From Macrostomum hystrix (lineage: Eukaryota > Animalia > Platyhelminthes), in contig CATNEN010000034.1 of NCBI GenBank assembly GCA_950097015.1, forward strand, positions 1,674,001 to 1,738,000: 64,000 nucleotides of DNA, read 5' to 3'. The translations under genes and the position numbers were made by a program. The notes beneath the pieces are model-generated. The model saw only the letters and a list, made by a program, of their open reading frames with translations, searched no databases and was not told the origin of the DNA. Shown here piece after piece: positions 218-10,877 of the stretch (positions within the stretch are counted from its first letter, which is position 1; every line of letters starts with the position of its first letter).

Positions 218-3204
218 ACAGTCCAATGTTGGCGGTTTGGCCAACCGCGAAAACTGGCCCGCCGGCGGCCACAATGGCGTCCCGACCAATGTTTCCCATT
301 CGGATCTGGGAAGTAAACGATGCATCAGATAATCTTGCTAATAACTGCAAGTCCCACTATTAATACAACCATTGCCAACTCTACTGCCTTTGATGTACAT
401 GTTCACTGTGATCCCCATATCCACTGTGATCCCCATATCCACTGTGATCCCCATATCCACTGTGATCCCCATATCCACTGTGATCCCCATATCCACTGTG
501 ATCCCCATATCCACTGTGATCCCCATATCCACTGTGATCCCCATATCCACTGTGATCCCCATATCCACTGTGATCCCCATATCCACTGTGATCCCCATAT
601 CCACTGTGATCCCCATATCCACTGTGATCCCCATATCCACTGTGATCCCCATATCCACTGTGATCCCCATATCCACTGTGATCCCCATATCCACTGTGAT
701 CCCCATATCCACTGTGATCCCCATATCCACTGTGATCCCCATATCCACTGTGATCCCCATATCCACTGTGATCCCCATATCCACTGTGATCCCCATATCA
801 CGGATTACTGTTGACAGAAATTTGTTGGCCTCGCTTACTAGCTGCTATTACTTGTAGCTCGTACTAGCATTATAAAGTATATTTATATGAGCATTTATAA
901 GTATTACAGTGCTCACCATCTCATCGTGGTCCGGAGGATTCACGGCTGTGAAGGCGGGCGGTGTGAGCCAGTACTGACCGTAGGAGTGGAAGCTGACGTA
1001 CATTCCCCTCTGCAGCCGGGACTTCAAGCTCTCAAGAAATTCGCTCAAAGCCTTCGTCTCTGGCTCCGAGAAGGCAAAGGGTCCGTGGTAGATGTCGCTG
1101 GCGGGATTGCCGCTGGTGCCGACGCCCCCGAAGGTGTGGTCAAAGTTTCTATTGGCATCAGCGCCGTAGTAGAAGCCGTAAGGCTTGCGGGTCTTGCGCC
1201 AGAACCGTGTCTGGGGGCAGGACAGACGGGACTCTGTGATCCCTGCACAATCCATGGGACTGTGATCCCTGCACAATCTATGGACTCTGTGGTCCCTGCA
1301 CAATCCATGGGACTGTGATCCCTGCACAATCTAGGGACTCTGTGATCCCTGCACAATCCATGGGACTCTGTGATCCCTGCACAATCCATGGGACTGTGAT
1401 CCCTGCACAATCTATGGACTCTGTGATCCCTGCACAATCCATGGGACTGTGGTCCCTGCACAATCCATGGGACTGTGATCCCTGCACAATCTAGGGACTC
1501 TGTGATCCCTGCACAATCCATGGGACTGTGGTCCCTGCACAATCCATGGGACTGTGGTCCCTGCACAATCCATGGGACTGTGATCCCTGCACAATCTAGG
1601 GACTCTGTGATCCCTGCACAATCCATGGGACTGTGGTCCCTGCACAATCCATGGGACTGTGGTCCCTGCACAATCCAAGGGACTGTGGTCCCTGCACAAT
1701 CCATGGGACTGTGGTCCCTGCACAATCCATGGGACTGTGATCCCTGCACAATCTAGGGACTCTGTGATCCCTGCACAATCCAAGGGACTGTGGTCCCTGC
1801 ACAATCCATGGGACTGTGATCCCTGCACAATCCAAGGGACTGTGGTCCCTGCACAATCCATGGGACTGTGATCCCTGCACAATCTAGGGACTCTGTGATC
1901 CCTGCACAATCTATGCTATGATTCAATCGCCGCTTACCGTGGCGGACGTGAAGGTGTAGTCGTATCCGTCGGGGTTAACCACGGGCATGAAGTACCAGTC
2001 GAACCTGTTCAGCAGGTCCACCACCGCAGCCTGACCGCTCTTGTAGTCGTTGATGAACTCCTTGATGATGTAGTTGAGGGTTGCGGGGGCTAGCCACTCG
2101 CGAGCGTGGATGGCGGCGTCGATGACGACGACGGGCTTGTTGGCGGCGCGGTTATTGCTGACCTCCAGCACAAGGAGCCGGCGGCCCTCGTAGGAGGTGC
2201 CGATATTCCTGATGGTGGCGATGTCCGAGTTGGCCGCTGCCAGACCCTCAAGCCAAGTGAAGATCTGTGCAGATGACAGTGAGGTGAGGTGGGTGTTGGG
2301 AGATGAGGTGGGTGCAGGAGATGAGGTGGGTGCAGGAGATGAGGTGGGTGCAATGAGGGGGGTGCATGGAGGTGAGGTTGGTGCTATTAGGTAAGTGGTT
2401 GCTTGGAGAAGGCAAGGCATTAATAACTCACTTCCGGTGACCTGGCGAAGAAGGTGGATGGATCATTGTTGAAGACCACAGCGTTACGCGAGTTCTGCAC
2501 GTCTGTCTTCAGCAGCAGGCTGCAACAGGGGTTGCATGGAGTTATTAAGAATGTGTTGATGCGAACACCGCAAACATGTCAAGACAGCCTCACCTGCCGA
2601 CATCCTTCTGCAGGATATCGAACTTGAGTCCTCGCTGGCTGAGGAAGCTCTGAAACTCGGCGACCCGAGCTGGGGGCACGACAAGGCTCTCCGGGTGACC
2701 CAGGTGGTTCTCAGTGGCCACAATGATCTGAGAGACATTGGTTGGTGCAGTGTGAAAACTCGGCAGCTCAATACTCTACTCACACTACTCAGCAGCTCAA
2801 TACTCTACTCACACTACTCAGCAGCTCAATACTCTACTCACACTGCTCAGCAGCTCAATACTCTACTCACACTGCTCAGCAGCTCAGTTCTCTACTCACA
2901 CTGCTCAGCAGCGGAACACTCCAGTCACTCAACTGAAGTCTGGAAGATCAGCAGTTTAAGCTTCGGTTTACTCACGCTCATGTCATCTGAGAATTTTCTT
3001 ATCTCCTCAGCAGCCTCATTAGATAGGGAACTCAGAAAGAATTCGTTAAACCTGAAATATTTGGCGTTAATGTTCAGGACAAGTAAAATGCATAGGGTGA
3101 TGCTGTATTTGAAGTGCTTACCCAATGAGCTGCTCGTTCTGGCTGATGGCTGCTGAAGCCAAGGCCAGCTGAAGGCAGCAGATAATGACGTCAAATATTT
3201 GCAT
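218..3204 (-). CDS. Secreted zinc carboxypeptidase, M14A (CPA/CPB-like) preproenzyme; 3'-partial
   Basis: Hand-spliced exons complement(3122..3204, 2976..3051, 2594..2727, 2432..2519, 1938..2264, 917..1210, 218..305), all GT-AG and in phase. Signal peptide MQIFDVIICCLQLALASAA; activation-peptide-like LVVPPARVAEFQSFLSQRGLKFDIL; motifs DAAIHAREW (Zn His/Glu), PVVNPDGY, WRKTR, GADANRNFD, SFHSYGQ. Remaining exon(s) lie left of the window. Confidence 0.93.
404..798. repeat. 18-bp minisatellite (CCACTGTGATCCCCATAT)n, about 22 near-perfect copies, intronic
   Basis: Direct reading; lies in the carboxypeptidase intron 306-916. Confidence 0.97.
1228..1912. repeat. 26/28-bp minisatellite (GGGACT[CT]GTGRTCCCTGCACAATCCAT)n, intronic
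   Basis: Direct reading; fills almost all of the intron 1211-1937. Confidence 0.96.
2275..2392. repeat. Short 18-bp repeat (GAGGTGGGTGCAGGAGAT)n, degenerate edges
   Basis: 3 good copies plus degenerate flanks in the intron 2265-2431. Confidence 0.8.
2760..2912. repeat. 29-bp minisatellite (CAGCAGCTCAATACTCTACTCACACTRCT)n, about 5 copies
   Basis: Direct reading; intron 2728-2975. Confidence 0.9.
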
Positions 3205-4048: not shown

Positions 4049-4373
4049 AGTCGACCTGAAACGTAGGTAGCATCATTTATTCGACCAGCATCCGTGGACA
4101 GCAAGGTTTCTTGCGCTGCGCTGAAAGCTGCCAGAATCCCTTTCTCTTTCTTGTCTAACGAAGTTCATCTGATTTCTGGTGAGTCAATTAGATAATAGTT
4201 ACAGCTGAAAAGTTTCCATTAGTGAAAAGCTTTAGCTTTTTCGAATCGAGGCGGCGACTCTAATAAAACAAGGAATTCGCCCCGCTTCGTTCTAAAACTA
4301 ACAAAATGAAAGCGACTTTTTTAGTCATTTGCGGCACAACAAAAACTATTCCCATTTGCAGAGACCCGATAAA

Positions 4374-7300
4374 ATGTCACCGAGCCTGTGCTTTGTCCTG
4401 TGCCTCCTGGCTGCAGGTAAGTGACTCGGCGGCCACTCTGAGACTAGCAGCCTCTAACACCATAACTAAGACTCATCCAGCAGTTAACACCCCCTTGGCT
4501 TTTCTAACCCTCTGACTCATCCAGCAGTTAACACCCCCTTGGCTTTTCTAACCCTCTGACTCATCCAGCAGTTAACACCCCCTTGGCTTTTCTAACCCTC
4601 TGACTCATCCAGCAGTAAACACCCCTTGGCTTTTCTAACCCTCTGACTCATCCAGCAGTTAACACCCCCTTCGCTTTTCTAACCCTCTGACTCATCCAGC
4701 AGTAAACACCCCTTGGCTTTTCTAACCCTCTGACTCATCCAGCAGTTAACACCCCCTTGGCTTTTCTAACCCTCTGACTCATCCAGCAGTAAACACCCCT
4801 TGGCTTTTCTAACCCTCTGACTCATCCAGCAGTTAACACCCCCTTGGCTTTTCTAACCCTCTGACTCATCCAGCAGTTAACACCCCCTTGGCTTTTCTAA
4901 CCCTCTGACTCATCCAGCAGTAAACACCCCTTGGCTTTTCTAACCCTCTGACTCATCCAGCAGTTAACACCCCCTTGGCTTTTCTAACCCTCTGACTCAT
5001 CCAGCAGTAAACACCCCTTGGCTTTTCTAACCCTCTGACTCATCCAGCAGTTAACACCCCCTTGGCTTTTCTAACCCTCTGACTCATCCAGCAGTTAACA
5101 CCCCCTTGGCTTTTCTAACCCTCTGACTCATCCAGCAGTAAACACCCCTTGGCTTTTCTAACCCTCTGACTCATCCAGCAGTTAACACCCCCTTGGCTTT
5201 TCTAACCCTCTGACTCATCCAGCAGTTAACACCCCCTTGGCTTTTCTAACCCTCTGACTCATCCAGCAGTAAACACCCCTTGGCTTTTCTAACCCTCTGA
5301 CTCATCCAGCAGTTAACACCCCTTCTGGCCTTTCCAACCCTCTGACTCATCTTGTAGTTAACGCCTCGCCACCTCTCTAACTCGCTTGACTCCTCTGACC
5401 CTAAAAGTTCACTAAGAACTGTATGCCACAGAATTGGCGTGACATTTTTTGACTAATTAAAAACTGCGCTGTCGCCGTTGACAGATGAGAACTTTCCCTC
5501 AGACTAGCACTCTAAATCGACTCACAATTCGCACAGCTCAGTGTGAGATTGCATGGACTCATAAGCCCCTATGAATTGCTCACACATTAGAGTGGCATGA
5601 ATAGCACGGCAATATAACTGGAGGCTGTTCGACTGCTTTTATGACAAATCCTCCACGCCTACTACCGTAAAAAGGCTGGCCGTATTGGTGAAATTTTCCA
5701 ATCGAAGCGCCTATAAAATCCCTACTCTTATGTTGTTTGTGCTATCGAAAATAGCATCTGAATTTACTAGTTGCTTTAAGACTACAGGAAATAGCTCAAC
5801 CTTTGAAAGAAAATACGTTCAAATTACACAACAAGACATGGTAGACTAGACAATGAGATTCCCGTGTAGACAATGAGATTATTTGGTAGACAGTGAGATC
5901 TATTGGAATTATTTCAAGTAGATTAACAATTAGCTGGAGGAAAACACATGTCACATTACTGGGACAAAAATTTATGGTTTATCATTTTTGCCGGATTTTT
6001 AGAAATCCTTATAATTAGAGGCTTTGTATTCACAAACTAAGCAAGACATGGTGTGACTGCAACCTCTCAGCCCCTGAATTAGTAATAGAAGTAATAGAAT
6101 GCCAATATTCTGTCGCATTAGTGTGAAGGCAGATTCTATTTGAAAGGTGTCGCGTTTGAAGCGTGAGAAATTGCAAAAAAAACAAAATTTATTCGAGATT
6201 TTCTGTCATTTTCGACACATTTTTCTGGGGGCTGCTGCCTAAAAGCTTAAAAAGGGCAATAGTAAGCCTGACATTTTCATTTTTGTTTATCATTTCAGCA
6301 GGAGTCGTTCTGGCGGCTCCCAGTCACTCGGAAGACTTTGAAGAGACTTTCTAGTGAGTTACACTCATGCTTTGTACAAACTATATTCATTCGCTCTAAT
6401 ATTTTACCTATTCCTACCCTGTCCTGTCCTGTCCTGTCCTGTCCTATCCTATCCTATCCTGTCCTGTCCTGTCCTGTCCTGTCCTGTCCTGTCCTATCCT
6501 ATCCTGTCCTATCCTGTCCTGTCCTGTCCTGTCCTGTCCTATCCTATCCTGTCCTATCCTGTCCTGTCCTGTCCTTTTCTATCCTTTCCTGTCCTATCCT
6601 GTCCTGTCCTGTCCTTTTCTATCCTTTCCTGTCCTATCCTGTCCTGTCCTGTCCTTTTCTATCCTTTCCTGTCCTTTCCTGCCCTGTCCTTTCCTGTCCT
6701 GTCCTGTCCTTTCCTATCCTGTCCTGTCCTTTCCCGTCCTGTCCTGTCCTGTCCTGTCCTTTTCTATCCTTTCCTGTCCTATCATGTCCTGTCCTATCCT
6801 TTTCTATCCTTTCCTGTCCTTTCCTGCCCTGTCCTTTCCTGTCCTGTCCTGTCCTTTCCTATCCTGTCCTGTCCTTTCCCGTCCTGTCCTGTCCTATCCT
6901 GTCCTGTCCTTTCCCGTCCTGTCCTATCCTTTCCTATCCTGTCCTATCCTTTCCTATACTGTCCTATCCTGTCCTATCCTGTCCTTTCCTGTCCTATCCT
7001 GTCCTATCCTGTCCTATCCTGTCCCATCCTATCCTGTCCTATCCTGTCCTATCCTGTCCTATCCTGTCCTATCCTGTCCTATCCTGTCCTATCCTATCCT
7101 GTCCTATCCTATCCTGTCCTATCCTATCCTGTCCTATCCTATCCTGTCCTATCCTATCCTGTCCTATCCTATCCTGTTCTATCATGCACAGTCTTATCTT
7201 TGCTACTCTGCTATTCGAATAAAGTTAGAGTCTAAGTCGCAAACGCTGACCTTCAGTTCGTGTACCTGTCACTCAAAGTGCTCCCCTCAGTTAAAAGGGC

Positions 7301-8039
7301 CTAATGAGCATGTTGTCGCGGGCGCTAGACTCCACCTAAGCAGTGATTTAAACCATTGCCGACTTGTGTAAGCTGAGCCTGTTGGTCGCATTCCAACACT
7401 AATTATCAGTCTAGTAAGGTCTGGCAAGTCTGTACACTGTGCATTATTATATATAATACAGCACTGCCTGTGTCAGCTCAGTCGCCGTGTCTCTCGGGAT
7501 TCCATTGGTTGGCGTTTTCCTCATGATCCATTAGTGAGAACTTTCTCATCCATCCCGTAAGGCCTGTGCGCTACCAGCTGATAATCCTCGTGCGGCTGGG
7601 GAGGACAGATCATAAAATAAGTTTTTTTCATAACAACCAGCGCCTCAGGGCAACCTTATTGCATTCATGGATACAGATAGACGTCATCGGGAAATTGTAC
7701 AGACTAAAAAGAGCTCTTGAAGTTTTATATACGAAGAATGATTTGAATAGTCTCTGCTTAAGAGGAAAACTCGAGAATTATTTAATAAATTTACTATGAA
7801 AATCCCTCCCTGACTCACTCGCACCCTCCCTGACTCACTCGCACCCCTCCCTGACTCACTCGCACCCCTCTGAATCACGCGCACCCCGCCTCCCTTGCAG
7901 CAAGCGCGGCTGGCCAGTCCGTTACGTGACTGGCGGCGGGGTGATGGAGATCAAACGCAATGCCGCCAGCTCGCGCCAGCTGTTCGAGGCCATGATGGGC
8001 CTGAGGAAGCGCGAGCACTGGCTTGAGCAGAGGCGGTGA
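4374..8039 (+). CDS. Small secreted neuropeptide/prohormone-like precursor, 77 aa
   Basis: join(4374..4416, 6302..6353, 7901..8039), GT-AG, phases 1 and 2 consistent. Translation MSPSLCFVLCLLAAGVVLAAPSHSEDFEETFY-KR-GWPVRYVTGGGVMEI-KR-NAASSRQLFEAMMGL-RKR-EHWLEQ-RR*: hydrophobic signal peptide, acidic spacer, repeated di/tribasic convertase sites. Confidence 0.8.
4468..5350. repeat. 42/44-bp minisatellite (CTCTGACTCATCCAGCAGTTAACACCCCCTTGGCTTTTCTAACC)n, about 20 copies
   Basis: Direct reading; intron 1 of the prohormone gene; 44-bp and 42-bp variants are interspersed. Confidence 0.96.
6411..7180. repeat. Pentanucleotide microsatellite (CCTGT/CCTAT/CCTTT)n
   Basis: Direct reading; intron 2 of the prohormone gene; source of the spurious SCPVL/SYPIL ORFs. 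Confidence 0.97.
7805..7872. repeat. 21-bp repeat (CCCTCCCTGACTCACTCGCAC) x3 just upstream of a splice acceptor
   Basis: Direct reading. Confidence 0.85.
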
Positions 8040-8283
8040 AACAAGTTGAACAGAAGAAGAAAATGATTTCTTCACAGAATTTCACTTTGAAATCTTGATT
8101 TCCTGTCTGACCCATCAGCCCGTTCGCCGCATTCTTTGAAGTGGACAATTGTTTAGTCAAACTGTGCTCCAATCTTCAGTAAATACAAAAAACACCGACT
8201 AAAAACTGTCGCATCTTCGGTTAACCATGCAGAAAACAGCAAACTTTTGGTGTTTACTGTGGCATTAACTTGTAAACTAGCAG

Positions 8284-8500
8284 TTCTATGGGATTGTCTG
8301 GTCTATGGCCTTGTCTGTTCTATGGGATTGTCTGGTCTATGGCCTTGTCTGTTCTATGGGATTGTCTGGTCTATGGCCTTGTCTGTTCTATGGGATTGTC
8401 TGGTCTATGGCCTTGTCTGTTCTATGGGATTGTCTGTTCTAACGGATTGTCTGTTCTATGGGATTGTCTGTTCTATGGGATTGCCTGTTCTATGGGATCT
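8284..8500. repeat. 17/34-bp minisatellite (GTTCTATGGGATTGTCT/GGTCTATGGCCTTGTCT)n
   Basis: Alternating 17-bp subunits seen directly. Confidence 0.92.
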
Positions 8501-9317
8501 TTCGTTCTGGGTAATTGCTGGCTAATTGGATTAGCCTACGAGCTTAAAGGGGGGTTGATCTGTTTAGAGGATCTGAACATTTTTTATTAGCAGCAGGCCT
8601 TTTCAGACTGAAACTGGCTGATGTGGCGGTACCACCAGAGGCTGGCGCAACATCAAAGCAATAAGACAGACAATTAGTCTGGGTAGTTGCTCTTGCCAGG
8701 TGAATGACTGTTCAAAATAAGAAATAAAGCTATGAGAATATCTATATTTTTGCAGTCACAAATGGCAATGGCCATTGAAAAATGTTGCCTCTATAAATAG
8801 GGATGCTTAGGCAACGCCATGGCAAGCTTAGAACAGTAAAAAAATCGACTGTTGCCGTAAGAAGGCCTTATTCTGTATTCGGATCGCTCATCTGTTTATT
8901 CTCTCCTCGGCCTCCATTTTATCCACTTCTCTCCAAACACCTAAGCCTGCTCTTTAGCTTCGCAATCAACCGTGTCGAGCTGCCGCTGGCAAGATCTCTG
9001 GGGCATTGTTCCCCGGTGGCCCTGCAGAGTCAATATTTGAGCGCTTTTGACTTTGCCTTCTAGCCATGCGGGATGCCCTTAGCAATATGTGTACTGGCAG
9101 GCACACATTTTGGCGGCGGGATCCAGCGCCACCTGACACAATGAAGCTAAGTCATTAGCTAGATGGTAAATTTTTCGCAGCTATTGTGTGAGGAAATCAA
9201 GGCAAATAAGCGAAAATATTCACCCGGCGGCTTAAACTACCATGAACTTCTTCATTTTCGGAGTTAAGTTGAACAAAGCTATCTGGAAAGCAATCGTGAT
9301 AAATAGGCCAGTTTATG

Positions 9318-10250
9318 GTTCACAACACAATCCAGAGACTGCGGTTGATGGTTCACAACACAATCCAGAGACTGCGGTTGATGGTTCACAACACAATCCA
9401 GAGACTGTGGTTGATTGATGGTTCACAACACAATCCAGAGACTGCGGTTGATTGATGGTTCACAACACAATCCAGAGACTGTGGTTGATTGATGGTTCAC
9501 AACACAATCCAGAGACTGTGGTTGATTGATGGTTCACAACACAATCCAGAGACTGTGGTTGATTGATGGTTCACAACACAATCTAGAGACTGTGGTTGAT
9601 TGATGGTTCACAACACAATCCAGAGACTGTGGTTGATTGATGGTTCACAACACAATCCAGAGACTGTGGTTGATTGATGGTTCACAACACAATCCAGAGA
9701 CTGTGGTTGATTGATGGTTCACAACACAATCTAGAGACTGTGGTTGATTGATGGTTCACAACACAATCCAGAGACTGTGGTTGATTGATGGTTCACAACA
9801 CAATCCAGAGACTGTGGTTGATGGTTCACAACACAATCCAGAGACTGCGGTTGATGGTTCACAACACAATCCAGAGACTGTGGTTGATTGATGGTTCACA
9901 ACACAATCTAGAGACTGTGGTTGATTGATGGTTCACAACACAATCCAGAGACTGTGGTTGATTGATGGTTCACAACACAATCCAGAGACTGTGGTTGATG
10001 GTTCACAACACAATCCAGAGACTGCGGTTGATGGTTCACAACACAATCCAGAGACTGTGGTTGATTGATGGTTCACAACACAATCCAGAGACTGTGGTTG
10101 ATTGATGGTTCACAACACAATCTAGAGACTGTGGTTGATGGTTCACAACACAATCTAGAGACTGTGGTTGATGGTTCACAACACAATCTAGAGACTGTGG
10201 TTGATGGTTCACAACACAATCTAGAGACTGTGGTTGATGGTTCACAACAG
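9318..10250. repeat. 33/37-bp minisatellite (GGTTCACAACACAATCYAGAGACTGYGGTTGAT[TGAT])n
   Basis: Direct reading; units differ by a TGAT indel. Confidence 0.96.
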
Positions 10251-10877
10251 AATTCAGAGACTTACGTTGTGAATTTAAAGGCAAGTTTAGAAGCTGTTGT
10301 TTTGGACGGGGACCATTATCCAGAGACTGTTGCTAAGATTCCCACGGACCCGAGGTTGAAATTAAAGTCAGGTGCATTTTTATCTGGGATTTCCGCTATC
10401 AAGTAGAGTCTCACCCTGATATCATGCATGCACTGTCACTGTACTTAATTCGCTTGCATTGCATGCCAATTTATTCGTCCTGCCTGCTTAAAAATGGGCT
10501 TCCGAGAGCGTCTGCAAAATCAAATTATGTAAGCGCCTAATTGATCGGGCGCAAATGTATTGAGGGACGACGGGAAAGAAACTAACCCTAGAAATCTTGA
10601 TCATGCAGCGATTTTCTGAGGAAATTTCAATCAGATCTGCAGTCAGCTCAAACCGATGCAATACATGCATTGGCATATGCACTCGAAAATGGAGACGGCA
10701 TGCTTGTGAAGCTGGGCAATTAATTGGGAATTGTAACAAAAAACTCTTTGCAGTTCCTATTGTTCGCCACGAAGGTTAGACTCAGCCGAATGTATCAAAT
10801 GCTTCTGCATGTTTAGGGCGAAATGGAATATAACTTAACTTCGACAAGTACGAGCTCGTATAGGGGCTCGTTGAGCT

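What the first reader, a model, noticed from the sequence alone, without database searches (positions are those of the whole stretch)
4374..8039. Hidden three-exon neuropeptide-like prohormone missed by the ORF track
Seen: three small exons, separated by 1.9-kb and 1.5-kb satellite-filled introns, splice in frame to 77 aa. The product has a signal peptide, acidic spacer APSHSEDFEETFY, two 15-aa peptides (GWPVRYVTGGGVMEI and NAASSRQLFEAMMGL) bounded by KR/KR/RKR, and EHWLEQ-RR. Established: this is the architecture of prohormones processed by PC1/2-type convertases. There is no Gly before the basic sites, so the peptides should be non-amidated. Inference: I recognise no family; the only weak resemblance is MMGLR to the tachykinin-related F-x-G-L-R core. 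It may be an undescribed lineage-specific peptide.
Basis: partly seen in the sequence, partly recalled or inferred. Interest (0 to 1): 0.8.

Follow-up and report, generated by a model that had tools for sequence, protein, structure and literature searches.

The report
Conserved flatworm orphan peptide-hormone precursor gene
This is a real three-exon gene of a Macrostomum flatworm for a small secreted precursor whose 15-residue peptide GWPVRYVTGGGVMEI is identical in M. lignano; it belongs to an uncharacterised three-branch gene family seen so far only in Macrostomum, a solid but fairly ordinary find.

Summary
Exons 4374-4416, 6302 (or 6299)-6353 and 7901-8039 have consensus GT-AG borders and read in frame. 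The product has a signal peptide, an acidic spacer, KR, GWPVRYVTGGGVMEI, KR, a second peptide, RKR and a short tail.

The gene model is confirmed from outside the window. Macrostomum lignano has an annotated 81-residue orthologue (Mlig028524, "hypothetical/Secreted protein"). It has the same three exons, the same intron phases and the same junctions, and its first peptide is identical.

This genome holds three more copies, and two further M. lignano orthologue groups exist. All share KR-(G/A)WPVRY-x-x-GGG-x-(M/I)-E-(I/V)-KR. In this core dN/dS is 0.08-0.2 among paralogues, and orthologues show 0 non-synonymous against 6 synonymous changes.

The second peptide is only weakly constrained and is not conserved among paralogues. 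The tachykinin hint fails.

No relative was found outside Macrostomum in 1.8 billion proteins, in Pfam, or in a full-text search for WPVRY. The closest described families are planarian 1020HH and schistosome NPP-27 (non-amidated Y-L/I-T-G-G-I-R-Y). They share only a Y-x-T-G-G core and the precursor layout, so kinship is unproven.

No transcript data were available for this genome, and tissue expression is untested. The scan had not met this sequence elsewhere.

The parts
4374..4416 (+). Exon 1 coding part: ATG plus 14 codons plus 1 base (MSPSLCFVLCLLAA), the first half of the signal peptide. The donor is GTAAGT at 4417.
   Evidence: tblastn of the M. lignano orthologue P0003 matches 4374-4412 (E 0.017). 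The M. lignano exon 1 has the same MSPS start and the same phase 1.
4417..6301 (+). Intron 1 (phase 1). It holds an 87/44-nt satellite at 4470-5362. It may end at 6298 if the first AG of the CAGCAG acceptor is used.
6302..6353 (+). Exon 2 (alternative start 6299). It encodes the end of the signal peptide (VVLA, likely cleaved as VLA|AP) and the acidic spacer APSHSEDFEETF(Y). The donor is GTGAGT at 6354.
   Evidence: The M. lignano exon 2 ends with the same ...TC TA|GTGAGT junction.
6354..7900 (+). Intron 2 (phase 2; it splits the Tyr codon before KR). It holds a 10-nt TCCTATCCTG array at 6412-7183 and a 20-nt array at 7804-7887.
7901..8039 (+). Exon 3 coding part, which encodes all predicted peptides, plus the TGA stop.
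   Evidence: This is the only block of the locus conserved at DNA level with M. lignano (80% over 107 nt).
7908..7952 (+). Peptide 1, GWPVRYVTGGGVMEI, flanked by KR (7902-7907) and KR (7953-7958). This is the conserved, presumably active, product.
   Evidence: It is identical in M. lignano, with 4 synonymous and 0 non-synonymous changes over the 19 codons (Fisher p 0.0025). W, P, V, R, Y, GGG, E and both KR sites are invariant in all four copies of this genome.
7959..8003 (+). Peptide 2, NAASSRQLFEAMMGL, followed by RKR (8004-8012). It is weakly constrained and is probably an associated or spacer peptide.
   Evidence: M. lignano has GDSKHLFDALMGL-KR. In the shared block pN is 0.22 and pS is 0.31. 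It is not alignable among paralogues.
8013..8036 (+). C-terminal tail EHWLEQ plus RR, before the stop at 8037-8039.
   Evidence: M. lignano has SREWMLHRQ, so the terminal RR is not conserved.

Best explanation
This is a genuine small gene of a Macrostomum flatworm that encodes a 77/78-residue pre-pro-peptide.

Proposed mechanism:
1. The N-terminal hydrophobic segment, which is split between exons 1 and 2, directs the protein into the ER. It is probably removed after VLA.
2. In the secretory pathway a subtilisin-like proprotein convertase cuts after the conserved KR pairs.
3. A carboxypeptidase trims the basic residues.
4. The released products are the acidic spacer, the non-amidated 15-mer GWPVRYVTGGGVMEI, a less conserved second peptide and a short tail.

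The 15-mer is the functional product. It most likely acts as a neuropeptide or peptide hormone on an unidentified receptor.

The gene is one of three ancient paralogue types, defined by the middle of the peptide (VTGGGVMEI, MSGGGLMEI and MAGGG-L/I-ME-I/V). All three predate the split between this species and M. lignano.

Shown here: the gene structure, its conservation, purifying selection on the peptide and its cleavage sites, and the presence of convertase genes in this genome.

Inferred only: actual processing, secretion, cell type and receptor.
For: Gene structure:
- The splice sites are consensus and the frame is open across all three exons.
- The M. lignano orthologue P0003/P0007 (81 aa, Mlig028524) maps to three exons with identical phases and junctions.
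- Another annotated copy of this gene (P0008) carries 40 residues of translated 5' UTR. This indicates that the M. lignano model is transcript-derived.

Gene family:
- Three further copies lie in this genome (the profile search finds exactly four).
- They have the same exon layout.
- For type B the layout is confirmed against M. lignano Mlig029116, down to the CA|GTGAGT junction.

Selection on the core:
- Among paralogues dN/dS is 0.08-0.20 while dS is 0.5-1.4.
- In the type A and type B orthologue pairs there are 0 non-synonymous and 6 synonymous changes (p 1.4e-4).
- The spacers and tails diverge freely by comparison.

Secretion and processing:
- The h-regions of the orthologues score Kyte-Doolittle about 3.0 over 12 residues.
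- UniProt's automatic name for the orthologue is "Secreted protein".
- P-domain convertase genes are present in this genome at several loci.
- The nearest clusters by protein language-model features are all peptide-hormone precursors: PDH, DH31, gastrin/CCK, PrRP, NPF, spexin and galanin. I treat this as a lead only.
Against: - No RNA or peptide data could be consulted for this genome, so splicing here is inferred from the orthologue.
- No signal-peptide or cleavage predictor was available.
- No expression site is known. A gland, gut or reproductive secretion would fit the sequence equally well.
- The peptide has no amidation, no pyroglutamate and no disulphide, which are the usual stabilising marks of neuropeptides.
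- One copy in this genome (L004) differs from its twin by 5 non-synonymous and 0 synonymous changes in the core and has a broken tail. Not every copy is therefore maintained.
- No homologue was found outside Macrostomum.
Confidence: 0.8

Rival explanations
1. The family is the macrostomid, strongly diverged branch of the flatworm 1020HH/NPP-27 neuropeptide family. That family comprises planarian (QS)YLTGGIRY, YSYLKGGIRW and PNYRNNRYLKGGIRW, and schistosome VPPYITGGIRY. On this reading it is a known family rather than a new one. This rival is nested within the best explanation, not opposed to it.
For: Collins et al. 2010 (PMC2953531; Table 3 and Tables S2, S3, S5, read) give the following.
- The precursors are about 77 aa, the same size as here.
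- They have the same layout: a signal peptide, then an acidic spacer ending in an aromatic residue plus KR (DYDPIY-KR against FEETFY-KR here), then the peptide.
- The peptides are non-amidated and confirmed by mass spectrometry.
- They share (P)-x-(R)-Y-aliphatic-T-G-G with WPVRYVTGGG.

This genome holds no canonical Y-x-x-G-G-I-R peptide in a single exon. Two pattern scans each gave one chance hit, with Ser in place of Arg, against 3-5 hits for the control pattern. The slot for an NPP-27 gene is therefore apparently empty.
Against: - The shared stretch is only about five residues and Gly-rich.
- The C-terminal half, which usually decides receptor recognition, differs completely: G-x-M-E-I against I-R-Y/W/F.
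- A comparably good short match exists to a different planarian family, PPP-1 (YYDPIGGGLL). This shows how easily such matches arise.
- The profile search of 1.84 billion proteins found nothing outside Macrostomum at E up to 0.001.
Confidence: 0.3
2. It is a secreted, convertase-processed peptide with a non-neuronal role, such as a gland, gut, epidermal or reproductive-tract secretion or a defence peptide. It would not be a neuropeptide or hormone.
For: - The sequence shows only secretion and dibasic processing, and furin-type convertases also act in constitutive secretion.
- The products lack amidation and other typical neuropeptide modifications.
- Macrostomum has many lineage-restricted secreted proteins (general knowledge).
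- No expression data were found. A full-text search for the M. lignano gene ids gave nothing.
Against: - A 15-mer kept identical while synonymous sites changed is typical of a receptor ligand. So is a core kept across three old paralogues with dS near saturation. Defence and reproductive peptides usually evolve fast.
- The size and layout match mass-spectrometry-proven flatworm prohormones.
- The nearest neighbours by language-model features are all hormone precursors.
Confidence: 0.2
3. It is not a gene: three chance open segments with splice-like borders lying in satellite-rich DNA.
For: The exons are very short (43, 52 and 139 nt), and no transcript from this genome was seen.
Against: - An annotated orthologue has identical exon borders and phases.
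- There are four copies here and three orthologue groups in M. lignano.
- Selection on the core is strongly purifying.
- Exon 3 is the only DNA block conserved between the two species across about 20 kb.
Confidence: 0.02

Closest known systems
Planarian 1020HH-1/-2 and schistosome/tapeworm NPP-27 prohormones (Collins et al. 2010, PMC2953531; NPP-27 is also expressed in Echinococcus protoscoleces according to PMC11196405)
   Same: - It is a flatworm family of precursors about 77 aa long.
- It has the same layout: signal peptide, acidic spacer ending in an aromatic residue plus KR, then the peptide.
- The peptides are non-amidated and bounded by dibasic sites.
- It shares the Y-aliphatic-T-G-G core, sometimes preceded by R or P.
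   Different: - The Macrostomum peptides have an N-terminal (G/A)WPVR extension, a third Gly, and a C-terminus of x-M-E-I/V instead of I-R-Y/W/F.
- There is one copy of the peptide per precursor, against two or three in 1020HH.
- An extra variable C-terminal peptide follows.
- No statistically supported sequence similarity was found.
Planarian PPP-1 (pedal-peptide/orcokinin-like) peptides, such as GAYYDPIGGGLL
   Same: The peptides are non-amidated, flanked by KR and 12-15 residues long, with G-G-G followed by two aliphatic residues.
   Different: PPP-1 carries many tandem copies with a Y-D-P-I motif. The Macrostomum precursors carry a single copy, have no [FY]-D motif and differ at both ends.
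Other orphan Macrostomum prohormone genes noted by this scan in the same genome, such as s1-384932 (34-residue amidated peptide) and s1-351198 (GW-amide)
   Same: They are small two- or three-exon genes with minisatellite-filled introns. They are conserved in M. lignano and belong to no described family.
   Different: Their peptides are unrelated in sequence and are amidated. The present family is non-amidated and exists as three old paralogue types.
   Same: For tachykinin, only a G-L-R string. For PDH, the precursor size and an L-x-x-x-x-x-G-L string in peptide 2.
   Different: - There is no FxGxR-amide, no Gly amidation donor, and the Arg is not conserved (MGL-KRS in M. lignano).
- Pfam Pigment_DH gives no hit even at E up to 10.

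Membership tests
Convertase-processed secreted peptide precursor (prohormone class) | N-terminal signal peptide | tested here: met
   - The hydrophobic run spans exon 1 and the first codons of exon 2.
- Orthologue h-regions score Kyte-Doolittle 2.96-3.27 over 12 residues, followed by small residues and a polar stretch.
- UniProt's automatic name for the orthologue is "Secreted protein".
- No SignalP-type predictor was available.
Convertase-processed secreted peptide precursor (prohormone class) | Conserved dibasic cleavage sites bracketing a conserved peptide, with variable spacers | tested here: met
   KR on both sides of the 15-mer is invariant in the four copies of this genome and in two of the three M. 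lignano groups; Mlig025753 has RR upstream. Spacers and tails diverge. The core dN/dS is 0.08-0.2.
Convertase-processed secreted peptide precursor (prohormone class) | Processing machinery present in the organism | tested here: met
   Pfam P_proprotein (PF01483) matches above the cut-off at several loci of this genome.
Convertase-processed secreted peptide precursor (prohormone class) | Transcript expressed in neurons or endocrine cells, and peptides detectable by mass spectrometry | not testable with these tools
   No RNA-seq, single-cell or peptidomic data could be reached. The M. lignano gene ids appear in no searchable full text.
1020HH / NPP-27 | Peptide core Y-[LI]-[TK]-G-G-[IL]-R-[YWF] | tested here: not met
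   Only Y-[VMI]-[TSA]-G-G is shared. The family here continues G-x-(M/I)-E-(I/V) (against the sequences read).
1020HH / NPP-27 | Short precursor with signal peptide, acidic spacer and KR, yielding non-amidated peptides | tested here: met
   Compared by eye with Smed-1020HH-1/-2 and Sma-npp-27 in Tables S5 and S8 of PMC2953531.
1020HH / NPP-27 | Significant sequence or profile similarity to family members | tested here: inconclusive
   The profile of the Macrostomum family found no non-Macrostomum protein at E up to 0.001 among 1.84 billion. It is unknown whether 1020HH or NPP-27 proteins are in that library.
Tachykinin-related peptides | C-terminal F-x-G-x-R-amide with a Gly donor before the basic site | tested here: not met
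   The window reads AMMGL-RKR with no Gly donor. M. lignano reads ALMGL-KRS, so the Arg is not conserved.
Pigment-dispersing hormone/factor | Match to Pfam Pigment_DH (PF06324); an amidated 18-mer | tested here: not met
   No Pfam hit at E up to 10 for exon 3 or for the orthologues. There is no amidation signal. The atlas score is 0.92 with only 152 shared features.
Adipokinetic hormone / promotilin (UniRef automatic names of two M. lignano paralogues) | Match to the AKH or motilin/ghrelin Pfam families, with the hormone directly after the signal peptide | tested here: not met
   No such Pfam hit at E up to 10. The conserved peptide lies behind a spacer, not at the signal-peptide cleavage site.

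The most novel reading that the evidence does not exclude
The WPVRY-GGG peptides are a previously undescribed signalling-peptide family restricted to macrostomorph flatworms. On this reading the three ancient paralogues each encode one non-amidated 15-mer ligand for so far orphan receptors, and the family is not derived from 1020HH/NPP-27 or any other described family.
Probability: 0.45. Interest if true: 0.45.

Novelty: new member of a known kind. Interest (0 to 1): 0.35.

Why it matters
Macrostomum lignano is a genetic model flatworm with transgenesis and RNAi, but its peptide-hormone repertoire is poorly catalogued. This work turns three "hypothetical protein" gene groups into a defined candidate ligand family. 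Each has a precise predicted product, a 15-mer that can be synthesised, raised against and looked for by mass spectrometry. The family also has a clear evolutionary signature.

If the family proves to be the macrostomid branch of 1020HH/NPP-27, that family would extend across the phylum. The conserved core would be Y-x-T-G-G rather than the C-terminus. If not, it adds a lineage-specific ligand for receptor deorphanisation.

Either way this is an incremental gain in neuropeptide cataloguing. It is not a new principle.

Tried and rejected
Searches that found nothing or only false hits:
- Pfam on exon 3, on the paralogue exons and on the full-length M. lignano orthologues gave nothing relevant.
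- A word-based protein search with exon 3 gave no candidates. The same search with the alignment of orthologues found M. lignano only.
- The profile search of 1.84 billion representatives found three M. lignano clusters plus three repeat-driven false hits. P0001, P0002 and P0006 are tandem-repeat proteins matched in 3-11 short stretches.
- Rfam found nothing in the window.
- The ESM Atlas gave generic hormone-precursor neighbours and no specific family.
- Full-text searches for WPVRY and for the Mlig gene ids gave no papers.
- Koziol et al. 2016 is not held in the library.

Readings rejected:
- The tachykinin, PDH, AKH and motilin readings fail, as set out in the membership table.
- Synteny with M. 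lignano was not found. The carboxypeptidase is not within 8 kb of the M. lignano gene, and the cystatin next to the M. lignano gene is not in this window.
- The idea that the head-to-head carboxypeptidase is a matching processing enzyme is unsupported. It is an M14A-type zymogen with an activation propeptide (PF02244), not a CPE/CPD-type enzyme.

Steps left out on purpose:
- The exons were searched separately by reference, and the public full-length M. lignano orthologues stood in for the whole protein.
- The 1020HH and NPP-27 sequences exist here only as text in a paper's supplement, with no reference.
Full report
**1. What is there**

The window is a piece of a 220-Mb, 42-contig genome (G000:C34:1674001-1738000). 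The orthologues found below place it in a Macrostomum flatworm that is related to, but distinct from, M. lignano.

- Exon 1 is 4374-4416. It reads MSPSLCFVLCLLAA plus one base, with donor GTAAGT.
- Exon 2 is 6302-6353. It reads VVLAAPSHSEDFEETF plus two bases, with donor GTGAGT.
- Exon 3 is 7901-8039. It reads KR-GWPVRYVTGGGVMEI-KR-NAASSRQLFEAMMGL-RKR-EHWLEQ-RR and then a stop.

The introns (1885 and 1547 nt) are filled with minisatellites. The exon 2 acceptor is a tandem CAGCAG, so the product has 77 or 78 residues.

Each exon was searched by reference, and the public full-length orthologues served for whole-protein questions.

**2. It is a real gene**

A six-frame search of this genome with exon 3 found three more copies, and a profile search found exactly these four. 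They lie on C37 (L002) and twice on C38 (L003 and L004, 520 kb apart in opposite orientation).

All four share KR-(G/A)WPVRY-x-x-GGG-x-(M/I)-E-(I/V)-KR, followed by unrelated tails. Upstream of each copy I found a 13-14-codon hydrophobic first exon in phase 1, and a second exon that ends in phase 2.

A profile of the four exon 3 translations was run against 1.84 billion representative proteins. It returned three M. lignano clusters and nothing else credible:
- P0003/P0007 (81 aa, Mlig028524; UniProt "Secreted protein") is the orthologue of the window gene.
- P0004 (89 aa, Mlig029116) is the orthologue of L002.
- P0005/P0013 (Mlig025753/002456) is the orthologue of the L003 type.

Another annotated copy of the Mlig028524 gene (P0008) carries 40 residues of translated 5' UTR. 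This indicates that the M. lignano models derive from transcripts.

Mapping P0007 onto its genomic loci L010 and L011 shows three exons with the same phases and the same junctions. Exon 1 ends ...CTG G|GTGAGT. Exon 2 ends ...CTC TA|GTGAGT, where the window has ...TTC TA|GTGAGT. Exon 3 begins AG|C AAG CGC GGC TGG in both.

The same holds for type B. Exon 2 ends CAT CA|GTGAGT in both species. That also validates my paralogue models.

Across roughly 20 kb, exon 3 is the only block conserved between the two species.

**3. Selection**

In the 19-codon core (KR, peptide 1, KR) the three deep paralogues differ mostly at synonymous sites. dS is 0.5-1.4 and dN/dS is 0.08-0.20.

Between species, the type A core has 4 synonymous and 0 non-synonymous changes. 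The type B core has 2 and 0. Combined, Fisher p is 1.4e-4.

The conserved block of peptide 2 (S-R/K-Q/H-L-F-E/D-A-M/L-M-G-L) has pN 0.22 against pS 0.31, and it has no counterpart in the paralogues. The first 15-mer and its cleavage sites are therefore the selected elements. Peptide 2 and the tail look like a variable associated peptide.

L004 differs from L003 by 5 non-synonymous and 0 synonymous changes in the core and has a disrupted tail. It is probably decaying.

**4. How it most likely works**

The hydrophobic start (Kyte-Doolittle about 3 over 12 residues in the orthologues) should act as a signal peptide, probably cleaved after VLA.

Dibasic sites are the substrates of PC2/furin-type convertases, and P-domain convertase genes are present in this genome. 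A carboxypeptidase would then remove the basic residues.

No Gly precedes any site, so the products are free acids. This follows from established prohormone biochemistry.

Actual processing, the cell type and the receptor are inferences. Language-model neighbours are all peptide-hormone precursors, but of many unrelated families. I take that only as support for the class.

**5. Comparison with known families**

Pfam gives nothing. This also removes the UniRef automatic names "Adipokinetic hormone" and "Promotilin" attached to two M. lignano paralogues.

The closest described peptides are the planarian 1020HH and schistosome NPP-27 peptides (Collins et al. 2010, PMC2953531). Their precursors are about 77 residues, with an acidic spacer ending in Y-KR or M-KR. 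Their non-amidated products are confirmed by mass spectrometry: (QS)YLTGGIRY, YSYLKGGIRW, PNYRNNRYLKGGIRW and VPPYITGGIRY.

The shared features are the layout and a (P)-x-(R)-Y-aliphatic-T-G-G stretch. The C-terminal halves differ.

No canonical Y-x-x-G-G-I-R peptide is encoded in a single exon of this genome. This is compatible with the WPVRY family being its diverged counterpart.

An equally short match exists to planarian PPP-1 (YYDPIGGGLL), and no statistics support either link. I could not align the 1020HH or NPP-27 sequences computationally, because they have no reference here. I put common origin with 1020HH/NPP-27 at about 0.3.

**6. Neighbour**

The gene on the minus strand upstream (about 218-3204) is an M14 carboxypeptidase with an activation propeptide (PF00246 and PF02244). 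That makes it a CPA/CPB-like zymogen, not the CPE/CPD type that trims prohormones. It is not next to the orthologue in M. lignano within 8 kb. The "peptide plus processing enzyme" idea noted for this window (s1-355556) is therefore not supported.

**7. Verdict**

The gene is a new, uncharacterised member of a well-known kind (small processed secreted-peptide precursors). It belongs to a three-branch family known only from Macrostomum and annotated there merely as hypothetical proteins. Its interest is moderate to low.

The scan had not recorded this sequence elsewhere.

Noticed in passing
window 218-3204, minus strand: A multi-exon M14A-type carboxypeptidase gene lies head-to-head with the peptide gene. 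Its start is near 3204, about 1.2 kb from the peptide gene's ATG. It has the Peptidase_M14 domain and the activation propeptide (Propep_M14), so it looks like a CPA/CPB-type zymogen rather than a prohormone-trimming CPE. It is not adjacent to the orthologue in M. lignano within 8 kb.
   Followed up: partly
window 404-799, 1234-1915, 8283-8498, 9315-10262: Several minisatellites lie in and around both genes. An 18-nt unit is 100% identical over 22 copies. The others have units of 26, 17/34 and 37 nt. They appear to share an ACAATCC...(G)ACTGTG-like core in either orientation, which suggests one minisatellite family seeding many introns and spacers.
   Followed up: no
L003 (G000:C38:30399842) and L004 (G000:C38:29880550, minus strand): Two type C copies lie 520 kb apart in opposite orientation. 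Their cores differ by 5 non-synonymous and 0 synonymous changes, and L004 has an altered, shortened tail. L004 is likely a decaying recent duplicate.
   Followed up: partly
M. lignano proteins P0009 (UniRef A0A1I8JFX4) and P0012 (UniRef A0A1I8H4U9): The public automatic names "Adipokinetic hormone" and "Promotilin" for two members of this family have no support from Pfam or from the position of the conserved peptide. They look like mis-annotations.
   Followed up: yes
window 4306-4361: An out-of-frame upstream ATG sits at 4306, and a good acceptor-like site (ccatttgcag|) ends at 4361, 12 nt before the start codon. This could be a trans-splice or 5' UTR intron acceptor that removes the upstream ATG. 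The M. lignano 5' UTR is collinear with the genome for at least 120 nt.
   Followed up: no
P0014 (UniRef, M. lignano, 123 aa): This variant model of the orthologue reads correctly through ...GWPVRYVTGGGVM and then shifts frame. It is named "FGE-sulfatase domain-containing protein". It is probably a frameshifted allele or assembly copy, or a mis-modelled transcript.
   Followed up: no
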